Shown one piece after another: positions 42,401-63,270 of a stretch of 64,000 nucleotides of DNA. Position numbers and translations under genes: made by a program. Numbering within the stretch: position 1 is the first letter of the stretch; every line of letters starts with the position of its first letter. The DNA lies in contig OZ286462.1 in assembly GCA_965644265.1 (NCBI GenBank), forward strand, positions 32,798,001 through 32,862,000, in the 5' to 3' direction. The notes beneath the pieces are model-generated. The model had not been told where the DNA came from, ran no database searches, and saw nothing but the letters and a program-made list of their open reading frames with translations. This stretch comes from Glycera tridactyla (lineage: Eukaryota).

Positions 42401-45400
42401 TTCTCTCAATGCATATTCATCACTGTTTTTATATCCACCCACTTCGCCATTACTACCAGTCATCATATACACATTGTAGTCCTTTTCCAATGTTGGTTTT
42501 CATTTCTGTGGGACATGAATTAGGGAAGATTGACAACATTTATCATGCTATTACTCTACAGGTTTTGATCTCTCAGGTAATATCATAGCATATACCAGTG
42601 AAATCACAACAGGATTGAGCATTAGTCTGACATCAGCTCAGCTGCAGCAGCAATCAATCTCTGCGTTGTAATATGGCACACATGTTTTCAGCAGAATATT
42701 GAGTAAATGAGTAGGATGTATCCACTTGAAATCACTATATTGACTCAAAAGAAGATGACACTGAGCTCTAAATATTATTGTGCTGGTGACAGCCGCATGC
42801 CAGATTCTAATGAAGAATATGCTAAGAGATGATACATGTGACATTCACATATCAGCTAAAAGCAAATTTATTTTCAATGGAGTTCATGTTTACCTACATC
42901 TGAGATATCAGTGAAGGAAAGAGGATATAAAAATTGAGAACCTCAGGACATATCTCATACCCTTTTTCGAAGTTCAGTGTGAAAGAGTATGTTTTCATTT
43001 TATTCATTCATCAGAGTCAAATGTCACAGAGGACACAGGACCGACAACAGAGACAGTCACAGCAGGTCAGTATCAGATAAATGACTGATAATCTAACCCT
43101 GCTGACAGCAACATGATATCTGAATTCCTCAGTATCGATGGTATAAAAATCATAGAGATGAATGAACCTTATTGCAGTGCCCTGACGGTTAGACAATTAT
43201 ATGATCAAGCTTCTAATTTCCATGATTAGCCACAGCTAGACCAACTGTCTGACTCACTTGATTAGCGAAGTAGGTCTATCTCTGGTCGAATATGATGAGC
43301 ATATTCGTCAGATTCTAATGAAGAACATGGTAAGGGATGATACATGTGACATTCACATGTCCGCTAAAAGCCAATTCATATTCAATGGAGCTCACCGGTG
43401 CCTACATCTTGGATATAAGTGATGCAAAGAGACCTGAAGAGAATGAACAGCTCAGCATAATCTCTTACCATATTTCAACGTTCAGTGTGAAAGAGTATGT
43501 TTCATTTTATTCATCCATCAGAGTCAAATGTCACAGATCACACTGGACCGACAACAGAAGCAGTCACAGCAGGTCAGTATCAGATGACTGACTGAGAGTT
43601 TGACCCTGCTTACAACAACAGAATGTCTGAATTCTGCACAGCAAATGATAAGACAATCATAGAGATGATCGAACTTTATTGCCATGCACCGATCATGAGG
43701 CAGTGATAAGATCATCCTCCTAATTCGCATGATTATACCCAATTAGACCATATATCTGACTTCCACAATTACCAAAGATGGCTTTCTCTGATATAGCATG
43801 ATGAGCATTTACTTCAGATTCTGATGAAAAATATGACGTGACTATTTTCGTCATTTTCGTGACTATCTCTGACTGGCCTTCCATTAGCCTAGATGTTGTC
43901 TTCCCAACTGACTCAATACTTTTTACCGGATATAGCTTAACCAAAACATATACTTCAGCAATAGGAAGTATGCTCATCATCTGCCTCACTAGGACACTTT
44001 GTTCTGATATCAGAGGAGGCTGTCTTGTTAATCTCTCTGATATCATCATATCATTACCAACATCAACATCATTTTTCACTTGTCCATGCTGCTCACTATC
44101 AGCATACCGTCTCTTGCCATCATATCAACACCACTAACCGTCACCATATACTCATTGTAACTCTCATCCCACTTTTGGCTTTGCGAGACATGAATTGGAG
44201 AATATTGACGACACTCACTAACCAAATAACTATTTCCCTGAAGGTACTGAACTATCAGACTGTGGTCATGTCATTGACTGGCTGATTCACACTAGGAACA
44301 CTGGTTCATGATCTGTTGACCAAGGTAGCATCAATGCCACATCAGACTCCTGCACTGTCAACGATTAGTCAATAAATACAGATGCAGAAACCAATAGTCA
44401 GGCAATGAGGAAGGTCGGTCCTGATTTCATCTTAATGGTGTAACATTTTGGTAGACTGCATGTCTGCATTATGAAGTCTGCATTCCCAGCTAAATTGCTT
44501 CATTAGCCATAGATGCTTATTCATCATGACGAAGTAACTAACGTTTGCCCTGACAGGATTTTCAACTCTAATAGATGTACCTCTCGATATACTTTTTGAA
44601 ATACAGAAAAACCTACGTCTCAGCAAAGGAGAAGATAAGCAACTTGAGAAGACAGAGATTCTGTATGATAATCAATGATATCCGCAGTACCAATATAGAA
44701 TCAGAGGTTTTTCGCAGTACTCGAGCACTAATTTTGATGAGTATGGTATCATATCCATGTTACATTGTCTTTTACTGTGTTTACTATCTCTGCTATCAGA
44801 TATAGGCATCAGATGGCAGAACATAATCATGTATGATGCAAAAAACCGCATCTGTTGGTGAATGTATGTGAAAATTCAATAGTTCCCATTTGGCCACCAG
44901 GCGGCTCTGGGTGCTGGGTTCCATATCTGAAATTGCTTGTTGGGGGTCAACGATCATTCATGCCAAGTTTCATGCTTTTTACCCAAAGTGCATGGTTTTT
45001 CCCTTATCTGCCCCACTATAAGTATATTTGGCAATGAAGTTACATGCCAAAACTAGGAAAAGTGGAGTAGCTGAAACTTTGCATTTCTTGTGTGCAGACT
45101 TTTTCAACAGATGTGGCGAATGCAGTCTGCACTAAATATGAGACCGAGGGTATTGTCTGTGCTCCAAAACTGTTTGTTTGTTCTCACAACTGCAGGATTC
45201 GACAAATTTTTCTTCATCTGTTCTTCGTTTAGGTGGAGCGAAATTTTCATCTGTCCTCCCTGTCATTCTCACCTTCCCTCCTGCGTATAATCATAGGCTG
45301 AATAACTGTTAGGTACCTGCCATCGGGCAGGCAGACTCATAAAATCACCTGCCCTATCAATCAATCCACATGTCTGTGCCAGTAGGGCAACCCTTATCGT

Positions 45401-48400
45401 AGAGCCCTGATATTGACTATGATCCTAGCTCAAGCAACTGACTCATCCCACGGTACAGGCATATCCTTGATGCAGCATCCATCAGCAGATTACTGAGGTG
45501 GGCCACAGTGTGTGCCAGTGATTGATGGCACAGTCCGGGAGCAAGAAACTATCAAACACTTATATTTTCAACACATATTGTCCAACTGATGGCGATGTAT
45601 TCGAGGCATTTCAGCAGTTGTCAAATCACATGAACATGCTGAACAACGTGAGAACCAAGGACACATTGGTACTCAGTGACCTCAATATAGACTATTTGAA
45701 AAGTTCCCCCAATAGATTACTTCTGTCTTTTCTTTAAAAACCATGGGACTCATTCAGATTATCTCCAGACCCACAAGATTATCACTGACAACAAGCACGC
45801 TATTGGATGTTATAAGGGTTAACTGTCCTGACCTCCATCAAATTCCTATTGTTTTCTCCCCTGGTCTCAGTGACTATGAAATGGTTATCACATCAAGAAA
45901 GGGACAGAAAACGTGCAAAGACAAAAAGACCATCAAAGCAGGGACTTCCAGAAACTATACAACCATATACTACAGGCAAGCGCTTGAGGCTACACTTAGC
46001 AAATTTGACTAGCAACCCTTCGAACCTACACTATTTTCATGGACACTCTCACATAGGTATTTGACGCCAAAGCACCATACGAGGTGATGTCAGTCAGAAT
46101 TGTAAAAGTCCCTTGGCGGACTGAGGCCTATATTTCCCTCATAAATGACTATAGGGAAGCCGATGATCAAGCCAGGATTTCAATAGTAGGAGATGATATA
46201 GAGAAAGCCCACCAGCTCATAAATGTTAGAAACAATGCAGCATGCCAACTGAAGAAGTCATCTTTCCTAGGCAAGTTTGAGAAGTACAAGACGGATAGCA
46301 AGAAATCATGGAAAACTTTCTCTCAGCTGCTGTCAAATTCCTCGAAGCATACCAGCATTGAGAGTTCAGAAATGGCCAATATTTTCAATAACTTTTCAGT
46401 GGAGATTGGGCGATACTCTCAGTAGCCAAATTACTGGCCCATCCCTCCCACATGAGCCAGAAATTCCAAAAGCCAATGAATCTTTTGATTTATCGCCCCA
46501 ACATTACCTGAGATCACTGCATATCTGAGAAAAATGCCACTGGCGAAAGCCACAGGTTTCCTGGGAATTTATGCAAGTAACACCACTCTTCAAGGAAGGT
46601 GACCGCTCAGATCCTAATTGCCCTGGGTCTCAAGGTTGATAAAAAAAAGTCTGTACATGCACAGCTTTACAAATATTTCAACAAAAATGAACTTCTAAAC
46701 TCATGTCAGTCTGGATTTCGATCGGGAAGTCACAAATAGTATGATAAATGAATCAGAAAATGGAAAACTCACAGTGGTTGCTTTTTTGGATCTTTAAATG
46801 GCTTTTAAAACGGTCAACCACACCAGACTGCTATCAAAACTGTCAAAATATGAGGTGTCAGAATGTGCTGTTGAGTGGTTCAAAAACTTTCTAGTGGGTA
46901 GACAACAAACAACTGTGATGAATCTGAAAATATCTGAACAGAAAGAAGTTACATCAAGGGATATGCGGGTATGCCCATCTTTTTTTCTCTTTTCGCTTAG
47001 TGTTTGTATGCTACCTGCATGTGTGACTTGTACTCAAAAAGGGAGATACAGTCTTCGGACTACCCCTTCAGAATTGAGATAAAATCATCTATGATTCACA
47101 ATAGTAATAAGAATAATAATGATGACAAATATAATGATAATAACAATGATAACAATATCACATTGATATCATAAAATGAATATGCTTAGATCGGTTGATA
47201 ATAAGTGTTTGTGGCATCATGATGTGGTTTAATCATCTTTCATTTTTCAATTACCACAGTGGCATAAGACCACGTTGACCGAATTCTCTGGCGAAAATGT
47301 CCACATAGCATCGTCAGTCATCAAAACAGTTATATCACATAATTGTTACTACTGAAAGATCCTTCCAGAAGTCAGGTGTTCAACATTGAATTGGAGGCCA
47401 AATGACATAATGATTATTGTTGTGTTGTAGATGTGTGTAACGTGACCAATGTGCAGGTATGCCAGACTATGGCTTTGCAAGTCCTGTTTGACATATTCCT
47501 GTCACCAGGAAACCCCAACCAATGCGAGTGAGTAACACAATGAAGATGCAGTGACTACCACTCACATCACCTATTCTTTTGAATGTACGGTTATTTTCAA
47601 CGACCCATATAAAGCATTTGCAATAAATTGTGACAAACTACCTTCAGGCAGATACTGCTTTCTTTGCTGCATATGCAGCTTAGTGTGTGTGCCAGGCTGG
47701 AATTCTGGATATTTAGTTGAGATGTTGGTTGACATGTATCCATTTGCTCCTGCTATGCACTACTTGGTCAAGATGGCTGTCAAACCTGAGTGAGGTCAGG
47801 CATGATATGATACTCATTTTTGTCATATTTTTCAACCACCATTGTGTATCATGTGCATGTATTCAATGTCTATATCATGTCATCAATTTCTGTTGAAAAG
47901 GTATTTAGCACATTCTTTGACAAGTTTGGAGACTGCACATCTGCTTTGCGATGATGAAGATGTCTTACTCTTTGCCATGCTTGGGCAGTCTGTCTATGCA
48001 AGCCTCGAGTGCGTGAATGGAAGTGAGTATATCTGCTCATAGTTTTCTGGCATTGTATCATTTGCCTCACTTTTATTCACTAGTTGCTAGCTTGTCTCAT
48101 GTACATCACAATACTCGAAAATGAATCGATCTCCACCAAGGATGCTCAGCCTTACGTTGTCACTAGCATCATCACCGTCACATCGTTTTCTTCCTCCTTC
48201 CTCTAGCTCTCCTCTCCCCGCTATCAATACTAGTGTTGTTGTCGTCATCACTGTCATCATCATATTCGACGACATCAATTATGTTGTTTTCATTATCGGC
48301 AGTGAACTGCCTTTGTAATTGTCGGTACCATCGTCGATAAATTGCCATCGACATCGCATTGTCCACCTAATCAATTTCTTTGCAATCTTCTTGCAGCAAT

Positions 48401-50466
48401 ACCGGACATTTCGACTGGATGTGATGAGGTTGCTTTTGAATTCGGAGTCGAACTCCGGCAAGTAGCTTCTGCCTTGGTATCAACAAGTGGACCTGAGATT
48501 TGCCAGTGAGTTCATCATAAGTATTAGGCACTGCCGTCATTGTCATTCCCATGGATACTTCGAAGGATGCACAACCGCCAACATTTCCACCATCATCACA
48601 ATTCACAATTCCTGCCCATCACAACACCTACAACAATAAGTCTATCACCACCAATATCACCACAGCTACCAAAACCAGTCATGTATAATTCTATCGTCAG
48701 CATTTTTACCAACACCTGTATTGCTTTCACTACTGCTACTACCACCAATCATATGCTATGCAAATTGAGAATTATGGTACATGTGTCTGGGTTCCAAAGA
48801 GTATCATGATCCAAGGATCCTACAGAATTGGGTAATTCGTTTCTATCTGGAAGTGGATCGGTATATTCTGGTGGCTGCCTCCCAGATAAAAATGAATTGG
48901 ACTGATAATAAGAATAAACGCTGGGTCGAATTGATAGGATACAGGAACAGGATTGTGAAAATGAATGTGAACAGATGGCCACGGATCGTCTGTGATTCGG
49001 ATTAGTCACTCAAATTGAATATGTGGGCACAAGAGGTCCAAAATGTTCTGATGTATATTACATTGAATGTTGACAAGAATGATCCAGATGGAATTATTGA
49101 TTAAGATGTTCTGTGGGTGAGACTGGAGCGCTTGTTGGAAGAGAGGGTGAGGCTGGAGGCAGATAATAAAGACAAATTAGATGCACTCATCGAGTGCGAG
49201 TTCCCCGCTAAGGGCCGAAATAGTTGGGCAAGTTAGTGCTGGTGGTCCAGAATGCCAGCTCTGAGTTTGTAGAGTACTCTGGGTATAAAAGGTGTATTGG
49301 ATGGGTTTCCAGATGTCATCTCAAAATTGTAAGAAGAATGAAATTTTGTGACGAGGCAAAATTTCAAGATGACCCCTGTGTGAGGGAAAATGTCCTTGAT
49401 CCACAGAATATATTGTGGTCACTTCTTATTTGAGAAGATTTTTTCAAAAGAAATGTTCCCATAGATAAATTGAACGACTTCCATACTTTATGAGTATATT
49501 CATTAGAAAAAAAACCTGGTTCTCATGTATACAGGGGGGTATTTTTATTATTCTATATTTGTTGTTAAGAATGTCTTCCTTGTTTGTAGAAATGCCAGTT
49601 TCTGGTATTTTTATAGTAGTTACTATGTGTTTTTATGTTGACCATGGTGTTTAACCCCATTGGTCTCATGGTTCTAACTTGTGGATCCAATTGTTTTCCA
49701 CCAAAAGCCATAAGAAATTGGGATGAGTCGCTTGCGGGTCGGTGTAGATGAAGTCAAGGACAAATAGAGAAACGTCATTCTTACCCTGATGGTCTTACAA
49801 ATTGAAGTGATGGCCGAATTCGTCTTCAACTACATTTCTCTTTATTCTGTCGAAATGGCCTTGTGGTCTTTTCATTATGCTTGTGCTTGTTTGTCCAACG
49901 TATTGTCTGTTGCAGCGTTTGCAGTGTATGCAATAGATCAGACTCTAGCTCTTGCATGTGAAGTTTATTCTACAGGTATAGCTTTTCCCTGTAAATGTGC
50001 TCTTGATTCGCCCACTGGGATCCAGAACTCTACAGTGGTTACAGTTTTTCGTCTTGTACATGTTCCGATTTTCACAATTTCACAGTTTCGTCATCTCGTT
50101 GTCATCCACCTTTGGCAGTTTGGCTCATATCAATTGGCTCTGTAAATTGGGTGCCCTTCTATAGCCAAAAACTACCTGTTTATGTTCGATGTCCTTTGTG
50201 GCAGACGACCTTTCCAGTACTTCCCAATTTGTTCTGGAGATGTGTTGCATCGGATTATTCCTGGGGTTAAAGGTAACAGTCAGAAAGAATCTGTCGTCCT
50301 TAATCGTGTCCATCTTCTCTTTCGGGATGAGGCTATCCATCCGATCCTTCTTCTGGGTCTGGTCTAGGGCCTGTTCTAGTAAATCCAGTGGGTAGCCCCT
50401 CCTCAAAAATGTCCCGCCATTATCACGCAATGTTTTTTGAAGTCTACCTCCCTGGTGTAGATATAC

Positions 50467-50508
<42 letters not shown>

Positions 50509-50906
50509 GTTTTTGTCGCCTCGTCAGACTTCATATATATATATATATGTGTGTGTGTCTGTGAGTGAGTGTGTGTGTGGGGGGGGGGTGTATATGTGAA
50601 TTGTTCGGGAAACCAAATCCTCTTATCATTGTAATTCAGTAGCAATACCAAGATCCCATCCCCAAATTTCATTCATATAGTGTGCAAAGGTGTAAATTGT
50701 TTTTTTCTTTTCCTTTTTTCCCTAACCACAACTGTCAGAACCAATATTATGATTATCGTTATTATCAATATTATCATTATCAGTAGTTTTAATGTCATAC
50801 TTATTAGTTGCCTTGGTTCCGGCTGTGTGAAACAAGGTATACCAATTTTTATATGTCCGTATTGCGAATCATGATCACTACAAGTAAACTATGAGTTTCA
50901 AAGTTT

Positions 50907-50978
<72 letters not shown>

Positions 50979-53900
50979 CAGACCAGTACTAGTACATATA
51001 CAATCACCATCACCACCACCATTGCTACTAACGCCCATAGCATAACCGCCACAACCACCCATGAAACCATTGGCAGCATCTTGGTGGTGCTAGTGATTAT
51101 GCAGGGAGGTGTACTGATACCTGCTGTGCAGTGATACAGGTGTTCAAGCATTGTAGCCAGGGTTCCAGGGTTCAAGCATTGTAGCCTTTGTTACACAATT
51201 AATCAATTCAACTTTAGATCATTTACTTGCTTTCCAGGGAGCTTGTACAATTCGTGACTATGATTGCTTCGTTTGGTGGCAACAACTGCTGGTTCATTCG
51301 GGAGATCTTAATCCCAAATGCAGAAGTACTATGTGCAGGAATGGATCAGGCATTGCCATGCGATCTGGAGATAATCGAATATCACATCGTTGAACTAGAG
51401 GGATTCGGAATCATATTCCCAACTGGTTCTGACATGAATTCCTCCAGCAGCGAAAATCCTCTTGTGACAGACGCTGCTAACTGCCAGTGAGTATCAATAT
51501 CACAAATTGGACTGTCACAGCTGTGGTATCGCCCATTCCACAAGCCAAAGTCTCTTTCAAACTGTTCGGTTGCCACTGACGTCCAGCAGGATGTGTGCTA
51601 GCATGGCCATGGTCAGAAATATACCATCACAACCAAGAAGCACATATACCCAAGACTATCGTGGAAATCTCTTGTCTATTGTGTTTCGTATATGTGTGGT
51701 ACGGGGGGGGGGGGGGGTAAATTATAGAAAACATGCCAGTTGAAGGCCCGTGAAATCCTCCTGACAATCTCGCCGAGTGAAAGATTGTTGTACCCTCAAC
51801 TGGCATGATTTCTTGCTTTCTTACCACAGATCAGATTCGGGATATACGTCGTTTGTCTGTATAAAAGGAAGGGAAAGTGTAACTTCTCTTATGTGTTTGT
51901 GTAAGTGACACGTACATGCAGGCATAGCCCGACCTCCCTGCCCACGACATTCCTGCGTTATGTGCGATGCTTGATGTCGTCATAATAACAGCGATTGTGA
52001 AGTGACATGATGTCATAATCGAGGTCACAGAACAACTGATGGAATCCACAGTGTGAAAGATAACGCAATTCTCTCACATCTTTCTCTTTCACTGAGTATA
52101 ACACATTTGAGTTAGAGAAGAAGAAATGATACCTGAACAAGATCAAGAATCAAACTGTAATGATATGCTGTATGCTTTCAGGGCAGTGGGAGTGTCAGCG
52201 AGTCTTCTACGGGAAACAATTCTACAGTGTTCCAGCTTCACGCAGCAAATATATGTCACCCAGCTCCACTTTCTAGACGTTCTTCATCAACATTCCTCCG
52301 AAGTCTGTGCAGGTAAGAGACTCCAATAATGAAGTAGGTGAGAGAGAGAATCGGATAAATGAGTGCATCAGTTGATAAGCCAAAGTGAGCGGTTTTATGA
52401 GAGGAGGAAAGAAGAGAGGGAATAGGGGGAAGGGACAAAGACAGACAGAAGGGTGAGCGGATTGAGAGATGGATGGAGAGGTGGAAGGATGAAGAGGTGG
52501 ATGGATGGGTGGATAGATGGTCGGATGCACATTTTCATCTGATCATGATGACACATACAGCACATGCATCAACTTGTGTACGAAATCATAGTTTAAATGG
52601 CCTGATGTTCATAATATTTATTCTGTTACAGATACTTGTAACTCCACCTCAATCGAGTCATGCAGAGTAAATGCTATCACTTCATTCGTCAGTGCCATCA
52701 GCTCTGGTGTTGAGGATCCCTTCCTGGCACAGTGCGAGTGAGTAGATTGGCCAACATCAGAGTGCTAGACGGGAGTTCAAGGATCTGAATACTCAAGAAG
52801 GAATGCGGGTCCCTCCCAAACCATACTTTCGATGCTGTGACCCCTACATCATGCTACACATATTAGTATACATTTGTATCTGCATCGGATACCCATTGCG
52901 ATTGCACATCTTCAAATTCTGTTGCACATTCTGTCAGACATCTGATGTATTGCTCGCCACATTTTNNNNNNNNNNNNNNNNNNNNNNNNNNNNNNNNNNN
53001 NNNNNNNNNNNNNNNNNNNNNNNNNNNNNNNNNNNNNNNNNNNNNNNNNNNNNNNNNNNNNNNNNNNNNNNNNNNNNNNNNNNNNNNNNNNNNNNNNNNN
53101 NNNNNNNNNNNNNNNNNNNNNNNNNNNNNNNNNNNNNACCAATAGCATCTGACTCTTTCAGGATGTCTACAGAGATGCAGGTATGTGTTGACGTGGATAT
53201 TTTCTGGTGTGGGCTGTCATTCGTTGCGGAAATCGATATACTCATGAGTAGTCTCTCAGAGATCACCTGTGTAGCATCAGGTAAGACTTTCTCACCAGTA
53301 GAAAGTGGTAGCTGGTCCTGAATTATTGATATATGATAGAAGTCATATATAAGATCAGCGTTGCATGTGGGGCTATGTGAGTGCTCATGAACAGGATAAT
53401 TAGTCCATCACAGCTGCTACTATACTCTGATGATGAGGAGNNNNNNNNNNNNNNNNNNNNNNNNNNNNNNNNNNNNNNNNNNNNNNNNNNNNNNNNNNNN
53501 NNNNNNNNNNNNNNNNNNNNNNNNNNNNNNNNNNNNNNNNNNNNNNNNNNNNNNNNNNNNNNNNNNNNNNNNNNNNNNNNNNNNNNNCAAAGATGATAAC
53601 AGCTTGAATGATCATGGACATGGCATGGAAGATGACAATGATTACGACAACATAGACAATGAATGTGTGGAGGTGATCACAGTGTCACTTATTGATGCGA
53701 GTTTTTCATTTTCAAGATGAGATCGATGAGGAGATGGAGGCATTAAGTGAACTCGTCACACAATGTTATGGCAATATCGATATAAGCACTTGCGAGTATG
53801 TATTTTTCCCAATCAAAAATCCCTATCTGCACTACGCATTTCAATAGCCAGTAAACTCGATTGGATTTCCTCCATATCATCATTATAGCGACAGTAACAT

Positions 53901-55447
53901 GGATTGCAGTAATGAAATAAACNNNNNNNNNNNNNNNNNNNNNNNNNNNNNNNNNNNNNNNNNNNNNNNNNNNNNNNNNNNNNNNNNNNNNNNNNNNNNN
54001 NNNNNNNNNNNNNNNNNNNNNNNNNNNNNNNNNNNNNNNNNNNNNNNNNNNNNNNNNNNNNNNNNNNNNNNNNNNNNNNNNNNNNNNNNNNNNNNGGTTA
54101 TATATATCTGTATTCGTTGGCTAGACAGATTTTCTGCAAGAGGCTGTAATTGAATGGCATGCTCACTCCAGTGGTCAGTATGTGATGGTGAGGAGCAAAA
54201 CAACCTACATATCCACTGCTGAATTGATATTTACTAGTCCATTGCCATGTTACTGATGTTTTATACACTCACATACGCTGTTTGTTTTTTACCTTATTCC
54301 AGGGGTCTGTCTGCAGTCATTGTATGTGTGTCAGGAAGTACAACTCCAGAGGCAATTACACTGTGCCCATGGGCTGCAGCCCTGTTTTCTCTCACTTATG
54401 ACGTGCAATGTGAGAGTGCATGTGACCTCCCAACTGCTGACACATGCTTTGATCTTGTGACCTCTGTCGTAAATGGCCTGACACCCAGTGAAGACCTACT
54501 CGACAGCCTGGATATCTTTGATGGGTTGGCAGAAGATCTTTGTGGGTAAGTCCATCAGAAAGTGTATGGAAGCCAAATCATGATTCCGGACAGGGGGAAA
54601 GATAATCTGACAGAGAAGACAGACACACAGACATACAGACAGAGATATTGAACAAGTTATGTCATATATTGCTTGTGATTGATTATAGGAGACCAATATA
54701 TTGCCTATGATGGATTATAGGCGACCAAGTAAAGTGAGATATTTCTTGAATGTATTATCAAGAGAGAAACACAAATGAAAGTAAACTATCAGAGTCGACC
54801 ATTTCTTGTTTTCGAATGAAGAGGGCTGAACAGATAGGAAGGTGCTGCTCAAATGCCTCGAGAAACAGAGTGAAAGTGAGAACAAACTGAAGAAGAAATG
54901 AAACTGATTATTATGTTGGTTGAAAGGAAGATGTATATGTAGTTGTGTGTGTATGTGTGTGATTGTGTGCATTTGCCCTTGTCCTCATCTGCTTACATGA
55001 GATCACAATTGAAACATTTCATATTTGCAGAGTCGTCAGTGTAGGTGTACAGTGTGTTTCATCCTCAATCAGCTTCTGCGGTGGATCCTATTCACAAACA
55101 TTCTCATTTGCAAATGTGGCAATATCAGTCATGGCACCAGAGTGTGAAGGTAGGCTCGGTTAGGTCTCATAAATGTGGATTATCGAAAAGCATCCCTTCA
55201 TTTGTCACTCATCAAAAGTATGTGTGGCATGCGATGGTCTCTTGCTTTTCTCCCAGATAATACTGCAAACATGTCATAAACGTGCTACCATATGCAGTAT
55301 CATATGCATCCAACAGACCGATGCATGCACAGAGTTACTCCTCACATGTCTTTAAGCCCCTCTTTCTCCCCGGCGACAAGCTTGAATTGCTGATATATAA
55401 TGCTTGTGTAAGTGTGTGTGTGTGTGCGTGTGTGTGTGTGTGCGTGT

Positions 55448-55481
<34 letters not shown>

Positions 55482-63270: not shown

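What the first reader, a model, noticed from the sequence alone, without database searches (positions are those of the whole stretch)
47431..63270. Tandem, diverged Cys-spaced modules of an unrecognised family follow the stalk in the same reading frame
Seen: 12 exons (1,723 nt, about 574 aa) chain with consistent phases. Modules begin C-X7-C (CNVTNVQVC, CNSTSIESC, CDLPTADTC, CNVSAIATC). A phase-2 intron falls one codon after a Cys, giving C-X8-C across it (QC|EGLSAVIVC, LC|GVVSVGVQC, IC|RALELAQIC). There are many NxS/T sequons. I do not recognise these as EGF, vWD, LDLa, CUB or Ig domains. Inference: roughly 6-8 copies of a small disulfide-bonded, probably helical module. The spacing loosely recalls DUF19-type six-Cys invertebrate domains (unverified). 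Mucin stalk plus such modules is an architecture I cannot assign to a known protein.
Basis: partly seen in the sequence, partly recalled or inferred. Interest (0 to 1): 0.75.

Follow-up and report, generated by a model that had tools for sequence, protein, structure and literature searches.

The report
Orphan six-cysteine modules in mucin-like gene
The small cysteine-spaced exons are real, selected coding exons: 11 acidic six-cysteine modules with no detectable relatives anywhere, and the 19-exon block is present three times in one giant, probably membrane-anchored, mucin-like gene of a marine invertebrate.

Summary
All quoted motifs are at the stated places.

My model has 19 exons (17 inside the finding, two 0.9-2.5 kb past the window end). 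They give 2568 nt, 856 codons, 60 Cys and no stop.

The same 19-exon block occurs twice more upstream on the same strand. Splice positions and phases match for most exons. dN/dS is 0.29-0.42. Cys is kept at 60/60 and 58/60 sites against 76% and 57% overall identity.

All four N gaps fall in introns. The gap-free paralogous blocks show no exon expected inside them.

A module is one A exon plus one B exon (C-x7-C-x~20-C, twice). Paired Cys losses suggest in-register disulfides 1-4, 2-5, 3-6.

Exon-by-exon searches found no relative: Pfam, PDB sequences, ESM Atlas, one word search of one exon, and one HMMER profile search of 1.84 billion proteins. Nothing supports DUF19.

Each block sits between phase-1 Thr-rich microexon arrays. 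EGF-like, SEA-like and transmembrane exons lie downstream.

No RNA evidence could be obtained. The joined peptide was not searched or folded. This stretch was already logged as s1-328249.

The parts
43522..43572 (+). Last 51-nt microexon of the upstream Thr-rich array (phase 1 in, phase 1 out). It is the presumed splice partner of e1.
   Evidence: One search lists 37 such microexons in the window. The junction codon 43572|47431-47432 reads GAT.
47431..47527 (+). e1, A-type exon (intron phase 1 in, 2 out), module 1. Pattern C-x7-C-x20-C.
   Evidence: Paralogues lie at -25652..-25553 (block II) and -64393..-64294 (block I) with the same phases.
47901..48022 (+). e2, B-type exon (2 in, 1 out), module 1. 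Block III has lost the fourth Cys here.
48397..48505 (+). e3, A-type exon, module 2. It lacks C1 in all three blocks.
52182..52312 (+). e4, B-type exon, module 2. It lacks C4 in all three blocks.
52632..52737 (+). e5, A-type exon, module 3.
52966..53137 (.). Assembly gap inside intron 5.
It sits on a 303-bp island between two gaps.
   Evidence: The island is 93% identical to block II, against 66-83% elsewhere.
53441..53587 (.). Assembly gap inside intron 6.
Block III has lost its first Cys.
53923..54095 (.). Assembly gap inside intron 7.
54303..54545 (+). e8, fused B+A exon (2 in, 2 out). It holds the second half of module 4 and the first half of module 5.
   Evidence: There are only three copies in the genome, all in this locus.
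55031..55149 (+). e9, B-type exon, module 5.
56053..56164 (+). e10, A-type exon, module 6. It lacks C3 in all three blocks.
   Evidence: The acceptor at 56053 keeps the conserved C-x7-C motif.
It lacks C6 in all three blocks.
58254..58517 (+). e13, fused B+A exon. It holds the second half of module 7 and the first half of module 8.
60572..60720 (.). Assembly gap inside intron 13.
60916..61031 (+). e14, B-type exon, module 8.
62543..62636 (+). e15, A-type exon, module 9.
62868..62998 (+). e16, B-type exon, module 9.
63168..63270 (+). e17, A-type exon, module 10. The block goes on outside the window with e18 (L009:870-1160, fused B+A) and e19 (L009:2331-2452, B-type).

Best explanation
**What it is.** The finding is the third of three paralogous 19-exon blocks, each about 856 aa, inside one very large + strand gene. 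Each block encodes 11 tandem, strongly diverged six-cysteine modules of about 75-85 aa.

**Module design.**
- Each module is built from an A half (C-x7-C-x~20-C; intron phase 1 in, 2 out) and a B half (x7-C-x7-C-x~20-C; phase 2 in, 1 out). A whole module is therefore a phase 1-1 cassette.
- This is the same symmetry as the Thr-rich 51- and 57-nt microexons on either side of each block.
- I infer that the two halves pack side by side and are stapled in register by three disulfides (C1-C4, C2-C5, C3-C6).

**Likely role (inferred).** The modules would form compact, N-glycosylated, extremely acidic beads (D+E about 13%, K+R 1-2%). These would interrupt the extended, probably O-glycosylated, stalk of a cell-surface mucin-like glycoprotein. 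That protein seems to end in EGF-like, SEA-like and single-pass transmembrane exons 40-46 kb downstream. On this reading the blocks work as protease-resistant structured spacers or interaction nodes, comparable in role but not in fold to the CysD domains that interrupt vertebrate gel-forming mucin domains. They may also bind cations.

**Shown:** real conserved exons, purifying selection, invariant Cys, phase compatibility with the arrays, and no detectable relatives.

**Inferred:** one transcript with arrays and anchor, the disulfide map, helical structure, and function.
For: - **Open frame and splice sites.** 856 codons have no stop, and all 19 exons have AG/GT sites.
- **Paralogy.** Block II is colinear including its introns. 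In block I only exons stay alignable, at 36-70% aa identity. All 19 exons are present in both blocks with the same phases. 18 and 16 of them lie exactly at the projected splice positions.
- **Selection.** dN/dS is 0.42 at dS 0.34 (III vs II) and 0.29 at dS 1.04 (III vs I). Cys is kept at 60/60 and 58/60 sites.
- **Internal to a larger transcript.** e1 opens with an acceptor and has no in-frame ATG in its open segment. e19 ends with a donor and no stop. Both are phase 1, like the array microexons.
- **Disulfide map.** Module 2 lacks C1+C4 and module 6 lacks C3+C6 in all three blocks. Module 7 of block I lacks C2+C5. Three in-register pairs out of 15 possible pairs each give a chance of about 0.008.
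- **Homology of modules.** The best profile-profile pairs are same-type halves aligned in register, for example e1-e5 with P = 1e-4. Ten of the top 12 pairs are same-type, against 48% expected.
- **Extracellular features.** Sequons are enriched and the composition is extremely acidic.
- **Anchor.** EGF-like, SEA-like and hydrophobic transmembrane exon candidates lie at +106.1, +107.25, +110.08 and +112.62 kb with compatible splice sites.
- **Uniqueness.** Only this locus in the 2.04-Gb genome matches.
Against: - There is no RNA evidence. Splicing and linkage to the arrays and anchor are untested.
- No signal-peptide exon was found upstream.
- Structure predictions are of low confidence (pLDDT 59 and 43). 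They were made on B+A exons, which straddle two modules.
- The hydrophobic moment peaks at both 100 and 170-180 degrees.
- A and B halves show no profile similarity to each other. Module HMMs do not cross-detect other modules. Homology among modules therefore rests mostly on Cys spacing and intron phases.
- Block III has lost two otherwise conserved Cys and has the higher dN/dS, so it may be under relaxed constraint.
- The SEA and EGF assignments are by motif only. Pfam found nothing in the exon pieces.
- A DIRS ORF piece from this genome also found nothing at E <= 1e-10 among proteins of similar length. That would fit a lineage poorly represented in the protein collections, so the lack of relatives may partly reflect database coverage.
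Confidence: 0.6

Rival explanations
1. The modules are very diverged members of a described disulfide-rich extracellular domain, for example DUF19, GDNF/GAS1-like or saposin-like helical domains. Exon-sized queries are then simply too short to detect the relationship.
For: - All family searches had to be run exon by exon, on pieces of 23-96 aa.
- The joined module was never searched or folded.
- The fold models are too poor to exclude a known fold.
Against: - The three fused B+A exons (80-96 aa, six Cys each) gave no family hit at E <= 10 or E <= 1 apart from obvious noise.
- A 96-position profile found no credible relative among 1.84 billion representatives or among PDB sequences.
- The Cys spacing differs from saposin's and the inferred connectivity differs from saposin's nested 1-6/2-5/3-4. 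The Cys number and domain length differ from DUF19's 12 Cys in about 130 aa. The saposin and DUF19 figures are recalled from Pfam descriptions and are my own knowledge.
Confidence: 0.15
2. The Cys blocks and the microexon arrays are not one constitutive mRNA. The blocks could be optional cassettes that are usually skipped, or they could belong to a separate transcript from the arrays or the anchor.
For: - No RNA data exist for this locus.
- The whole block (2568 nt, 1-1 symmetric), the module pairs e6+e7 and e11+e12, and every microexon can be skipped without changing the frame.
- Another note on this genome reports array microexons that assembled transcripts skip (s1-314068, unchecked).
Against: - The block has no start codon context at e1 and no stop at e19, so it cannot be a gene of its own.
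- The [block + array] unit has been triplicated as a unit on one strand.
- Purifying selection and invariant Cys show that the exons are translated in at least some isoform.
Confidence: 0.15
3. Block III, the block in the finding, is a decaying duplicate. It would be a set of pseudo-exons that merely remain open after recent segmental duplication of block II.
For: - dS between III and II is only 0.34, and dN/dS is higher (0.42) than against block I.
- Block III alone has lost two conserved Cys, in e2 and e7.
- Its assembly is fragmentary, with five gaps. One island is 93% identical to block II.
Against: - There is no stop or frameshift in 856 codons, and all 38 splice sites are intact.
- Exon identity (84.6% nt) exceeds the identity of the alignable stretches that are mostly intron (about 66-79%).
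- All 60 Cys of block III are shared with block II.
- dN/dS is well below 1.
Confidence: 0.1

Closest known systems
CysD domains of gel-forming mucins (MUC2, MUC5AC, MUC5B)
   Same: Both are disulfide-rich globular domains that interrupt long O-glycosylated mucin domains. MUC2 CysD lies between two mucin domains (PMC3195396, abstract as listed). Its proposed role is as a structured node between extended glycan-bearing stretches (my knowledge).
   Different: From my own knowledge, CysD is about 110 aa with 10 Cys and a WxxW motif, and it occurs singly. Here a module is about 78 aa with 6 Cys and no WxxW, and 11 modules run in series. There is no sequence match. The carrier protein looks membrane-anchored, not vWD-polymerised.
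SEA-type transmembrane mucins (MUC3/12/13/17 class); chicken Muc13 with a multi-exon mucin domain
   Same: Both have a Thr-rich repeat ectodomain followed by EGF-like, SEA-like ('G-S-T-I-V' motif), EGF-like and single-pass transmembrane pieces. In chicken Muc13 too, the mucin domain is encoded by many exons (PMC1552070, title and abstract).
   Different: SEA and EGF are not confirmed by any profile here. No described transmembrane mucin that I know of carries 33 six-Cys modules in three blocks between its repeat arrays.
   Same: It is also a Cys-rich, presumably extracellular, invertebrate domain.
   Different: No Pfam match to any exon at E <= 10 or E <= 1. From my own knowledge of the Pfam description, DUF19 is about 130 aa with 12 Cys and is found in nematodes.
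Saposin-like six-Cys helical domains
   Same: Both are about 80 aa with six Cys, and the modules here are predicted to be helical.
   Different: The saposin spacing (C-x2/3-C ... C-x~10-C ... C-x5/6-C) and nested 1-6/2-5/3-4 bonds are from my own knowledge. They differ from the tandem C-x7-C-x20-C x2 pattern and the inferred 1-4/2-5/3-6 map. There is no Pfam match.
Micro-exon gene arrays (schistosome MEG and SmPoMuc genes)
   Same: Both use symmetric microexons, one peptide repeat per exon, in homogenised exon-intron arrays. Note s1-340384 makes the same comparison.
   Different: This applies to the flanking stalks, not to the Cys modules. Here the arrays alternate with large blocks of structured domains.

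Membership tests
DUF19 (PF01579) | Match to the Pfam model at or above its gathering score | tested here: not met
   All 19 exons of block III and several paralogues were scanned singly. No DUF19 hit appeared even at E <= 10 or E <= 1. The joined peptide was not scanned.
DUF19 (PF01579) | About 130 aa with 12 conserved Cys (Pfam description, my knowledge) | tested here: not met
   The repeating cassette is about 75-85 aa with 6 Cys, bounded by phase-1 introns.
EGF, vWD, LDLa, CUB, Ig or any other Pfam-A domain | Profile match | tested here: not met
   Only sub-threshold noise was returned, such as methyltransferase and MlaA models.
Saposin-like (SapB) | Cys spacing C-x2/3-C ... C-x5/6-C in a palindromic order | tested here: not met
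   The spacing here is C-x7-C-x~20-C-x8/9-C-x7-C-x~20-C.
Saposin-like (SapB) | Nested disulfides 1-6, 2-5, 3-4 | tested here: inconclusive
   Paired Cys losses point to 1-4, 2-5, 3-6. This is an inference, not a measurement.
Mucin CysD domain | About 110 aa, 10 Cys, WxxW motif (my knowledge) | tested here: not met
   There are six Cys per module, no WxxW in the module sequences shown, and no profile hit.
Mucin CysD domain | Position between two mucin (PTS) domains | tested here: met
   Each block lies between Thr-rich microexon arrays on the same strand and in a compatible phase.
SEA-type transmembrane mucin | Ser/Thr-rich tandem-repeat ectodomain | tested here: met
   There are 39 microexons of 51 nt before the block and 32 of 57 nt after it, each encoding a Thr-rich acidic repeat of about 17-19 aa.
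SEA-type transmembrane mucin | SEA domain | tested here: inconclusive
   An exon at +110079-110246 begins with an S-T-I-V motif after a Gly, like the SEA cleavage site. Pfam found nothing in that piece.
SEA-type transmembrane mucin | Single transmembrane helix near the C-terminus, in the same transcript | tested here: inconclusive
   A hydrophobic segment of about 27 aa follows an EGF-like end in exon +112624-112801. Linkage to the Cys blocks has no RNA support.
SEA-type transmembrane mucin | N-terminal signal peptide | tested here: inconclusive
   A crude scan of 26 kb upstream of block I found no convincing first exon.
Micro-exon array genes | Symmetric microexons in a tandem exon-intron unit | tested here: met
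   The 2998-bp unit occurs about 12 times, with three 51-nt phase 1-1 exons each. This holds for the flanking stalk, not for the modules.

The most novel reading that the evidence does not exclude
The A+B cassette may be a previously undescribed extracellular fold. It would be an internally duplicated, helical, six-Cys domain whose two halves are stapled in register (1-4, 2-5, 3-6). It would have been amplified to 33 copies in a lineage-restricted polyanionic surface glycoprotein, so a new domain family was born and expanded inside a mucin gene by phase 1-1 exon duplication.
Probability: 0.45. Interest if true: 0.6.

Novelty: new variant of a known kind. Interest (0 to 1): 0.45.

Why it matters
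If the modules are a new fold, they add a domain family to the small set of structured units known to interrupt mucin stalks.

The locus is also an unusually clean case of domain amplification by symmetric-phase exon duplication, repeated at three nested scales: half-module, module, and block plus array.

The paired Cys losses give a testable disulfide map without any structure.

In practice, gene predictors are likely to fragment or miss this gene. The 19-exon model and its two paralogues give an annotation template.

The biological role is open. It could be surface barrier, cation binding or adhesion. Without RNA data or homologues from other species, the wider importance stays modest.

Tried and rejected
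- **Pfam.** All exons were scanned singly. Only noise came back.
- **Word search.** Exon e18 found nothing among proteins of 53-168 aa.
- **HMMER search of 1.84 billion representatives with the e18 profile.** It returned three hits, none credible. The tick protein is a 98-aa tandem-repeat ORF (sequence read). The bacterial protein is a PKD-domain protein (Pfam). The Chlamydomonas protein is Thr/Ser-rich by composition. I judged the last two without viewing their alignments.
- **PDB sequence search.** Profiles A1 and A2 gave nothing.
- **ESM Atlas.** The feature search on e18 and e13 gave no usable hit.
- **AlphaFold.** The two B+A exons, each with a 3-row alignment, gave pLDDT 59 and 43.
- **Fold searches on the better model.** They gave only generic helical matches: Z <= 6.7, below the tool's stated noise level for helical models, and atlas TM <= 0.58.
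- **Internal comparisons.** The A-half profile against the B-half profile showed no similarity. Module HMMs detect only their own paralogues. A composite B plus B+A alignment (A3) misaligned the Cys and was dropped.
- **Database calibration.** A DIRS ORF piece found nothing at 1e-10, so this is uninformative beyond hinting that the lineage is poorly represented.
- **Signal-peptide scan.** Nothing convincing was found upstream of block I.
- **Hydrophobic-moment test for helicity.** The result was ambiguous.
- It was built only inside scripts to check the frame and composition.
Full report
**Setting**

The window is G000:C10:32798001-32862000 (+) of a 2.04-Gb genome. Other notes of the scan call the animal a marine worm. 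I did not verify that.

Positions 1-34000 and 42900-45900 are about 12 copies of a 2998-bp unit. Each unit carries three 51-nt, phase 1-1 microexons that encode Thr-rich acidic 17-mers. There are 37 such exons in the window. A mobile-element insertion splits the array at 34.2-41.8 kb (note s1-328267). The finding starts 3.9 kb after the last microexon (43522-43572).

**Checking the observation**

I listed stop-free segments, acceptors and donors. This rebuilt a chain that alternates between two exon types:
- A-type exons: intron phase 1 in, 2 out.
- B-type exons: phase 2 in, 1 out.
- Three fused B+A exons: phase 2 in, 2 out.

**Paralogous blocks**

A DNA search of the animal's own genome showed copies of the last exons 75 kb and 110 kb upstream. 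I fetched 140 kb upstream and 80 kb downstream. The whole block occurs three times on the + strand:
- Block I: window coordinates -64393 to -45397.
- Block II: -25652 to -10520.
- Block III, the finding: 47431 to +66452.

Block II is colinear with block III through exons and introns at 66-93% nucleotide identity. In block I only exons are still alignable.

It also exposed two exons beyond its end, L009:870-1160 and L009:2331-2452. It moved two acceptors as well, to 47901 and 56053.

The final model has 19 exons, 2568 nt and 856 codons, with no stop. The same 19 exons exist in blocks I and II with the same phases and canonical AG/GT sites. Most lie exactly at the projected positions: 18 in block II and 16 in block I.

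**Gaps**

The four N runs in the finding lie in introns 5, 6, 7 and 13. A fifth (63287-63439) lies in intron 17. Their flanks are colinear with gap-free block II. Blocks I and II show no extra conserved exon in the matching introns. So no reading frame crosses a gap, and no exon is expected to be hidden.

One caution remains. Exon e6 sits on a 303-bp island between two gaps. That island is 93% identical to block II, well above the 66-83% seen elsewhere. It could reflect gene conversion or a misplaced short contig.

**Are they coding?**
- dN/dS is 0.42 (III vs II, dS 0.34), 0.29 (III vs I, dS 1.04) and 0.34 (II vs I).
- Amino-acid identity is 76% and 57%, yet Cys is conserved at 60/60 and 58/60 positions.
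- Exon nucleotide identity between III and II is 84.6%. The alignable stretches that are mostly intron are about 66-79% identical.
- N-x-S/T sequons are enriched: 13 against 6.6 +/- 2.3 in shuffles.

These are translated, disulfide-bonded, probably glycosylated exons.

**Anatomy of a module**

Both halves show C-x7-C-x~20-C. The A half ends at its third Cys plus two bases. The B half adds seven residues before its first Cys and one to four after its last. An A+B pair is a phase 1-1 cassette of about 75-85 aa with six Cys. A block holds 11 cassettes. Two have short A halves (e7, e12) and two have long insertions (e13, e18).

Direct sequence evidence that the modules are homologous is weak but points the right way:
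- The best profile-profile pair is e1 against e5 (P = 1e-4 over 231 comparisons).
- Ten of the twelve best pairs are same-type halves, mostly aligned in register, against 48% expected.
- A and B profiles do not match each other, and module HMMs do not cross-detect.

**Disulfide map (inferred)**
- Module 2 lacks C1 and C4 in all three blocks.
- Module 6 lacks C3 and C6 in all three blocks.
- Module 7 of block I lacks C2 and C5.

Cys are usually lost in bonded pairs. This suggests 1-4, 2-5 and 3-6, meaning the two halves are stapled in register. It also argues that A+B, not B+A, is the folding unit. The chance of three in-register pairs is about 0.2 cubed, or 0.008. Block III alone has lost C4 of module 1 and C1 of module 4, which leaves two unpaired Cys.

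**Composition**

Each block has 107-112 Asp+Glu but only 10-20 Lys+Arg. That makes it an extreme polyanion.

**Searches for relatives**

The joined peptide was built only inside scripts and was not searched or folded.
- Pfam found nothing credible for any exon or for paralogous copies.
- The genome itself holds only the three copies of e8 and e13. A B-half profile finds only this locus.
- The word search found nothing.
- I chose the e18 profile for the single large HMMER search. In a held-out test it scored 145 bits on block I, against 81 bits for a general B-half profile.
- Against 1.84 billion representatives it returned three hits. I read the tick hit's sequence: it is a tandem-repeat ORF. 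The other two are a bacterial PKD-domain protein and a Thr/Ser-rich algal protein, judged from Pfam and composition only.
- PDB sequences and ESM Atlas gave nothing.

AlphaFold models of e18 and e8 are all-helical but of low confidence (pLDDT 59 and 43). Fold searches on the better model gave only generic helical matches below the tool's stated noise level. A hydrophobic-moment test was ambiguous. 'Helical' therefore remains a weakly supported guess.

**Gene context**
- e1 has no upstream in-frame ATG in its open segment, and e19 has no stop. Both junctions are phase 1, like the microexons. The junction codons read GAT and GTG. Each block must therefore be internal to a longer mRNA.
- The order along the strand is: block I, 5 microexons, block II, 39 microexons, block III, 32 microexons of 57 nt plus six more.
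- After that come candidate exons for an EGF-like domain (+106141-106252 and +107252-107331), an SEA-like piece (+110079-110246), and an EGF-like end followed by a hydrophobic segment of about 27 residues (+112624-112801).
- This agrees with note s1-340384, which called the downstream array the stalk of a membrane-anchored protein.
- Pfam did not confirm EGF or SEA on these short pieces. I found no signal-peptide exon.

**RNA**

Splicing, exon inclusion and linkage to arrays and anchor are therefore inferred, not shown.

**Verdict**

The finding is real, and larger than described. It is one of three 11-module blocks of an orphan, acidic, six-Cys domain embedded in a giant microexon-built mucin-like gene.

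It is not DUF19 or any family I could detect. That negative result is limited by exon-sized queries and by possibly thin database coverage of this lineage.

The general design has precedents: structured Cys domains interrupting mucin stalks, SEA-type anchors, and microexon arrays. The module itself appears new.

Noticed in passing
window 53138-53440: A 303-bp island between two N gaps, holding exon e6, is 93% identical to block II. Neighbouring stretches are 66-83% identical. This could be gene conversion or a misplaced short contig.
   Followed up: partly
window 61548-62290: A 372-bp unit is duplicated in tandem (2.0 copies, 98% identical) inside intron 14 of the block.
   Followed up: no
window 46057-47082 (+) and 50125-50430 (-): These open frames look to me like reverse-transcriptase and mobile-element fragments. 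They lie in the introns before e1 and between e3 and e4. I judged them by eye only and ran no search.
   Followed up: no
L009:1177-1269: A partial tandem copy of the 3' end of exon e18 lies 17 nt after its donor, in the same frame. It was seen only in block III.
   Followed up: partly
L013:6033-6251, L014:3236-3553, L015:4769-5008: Three similar + strand open pieces contain 'G-S-T-[IV]-V', like an SEA cleavage motif. The first precedes the transmembrane exon of this gene. The other two may belong to downstream paralogous genes.
   Followed up: no
L009-L011 (window +68290 to +92920): Every 57-nt microexon of the downstream array has a second AG 6 nt further on, in frame, as note s1-340491 reports.
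   Followed up: partly
blocks I-III (L024, L003-L008, window, L009): Each block of about 856 aa has 107-112 Asp+Glu but only 10-20 Lys+Arg. The flanking stalk repeats are acidic too.
   Followed up: partly
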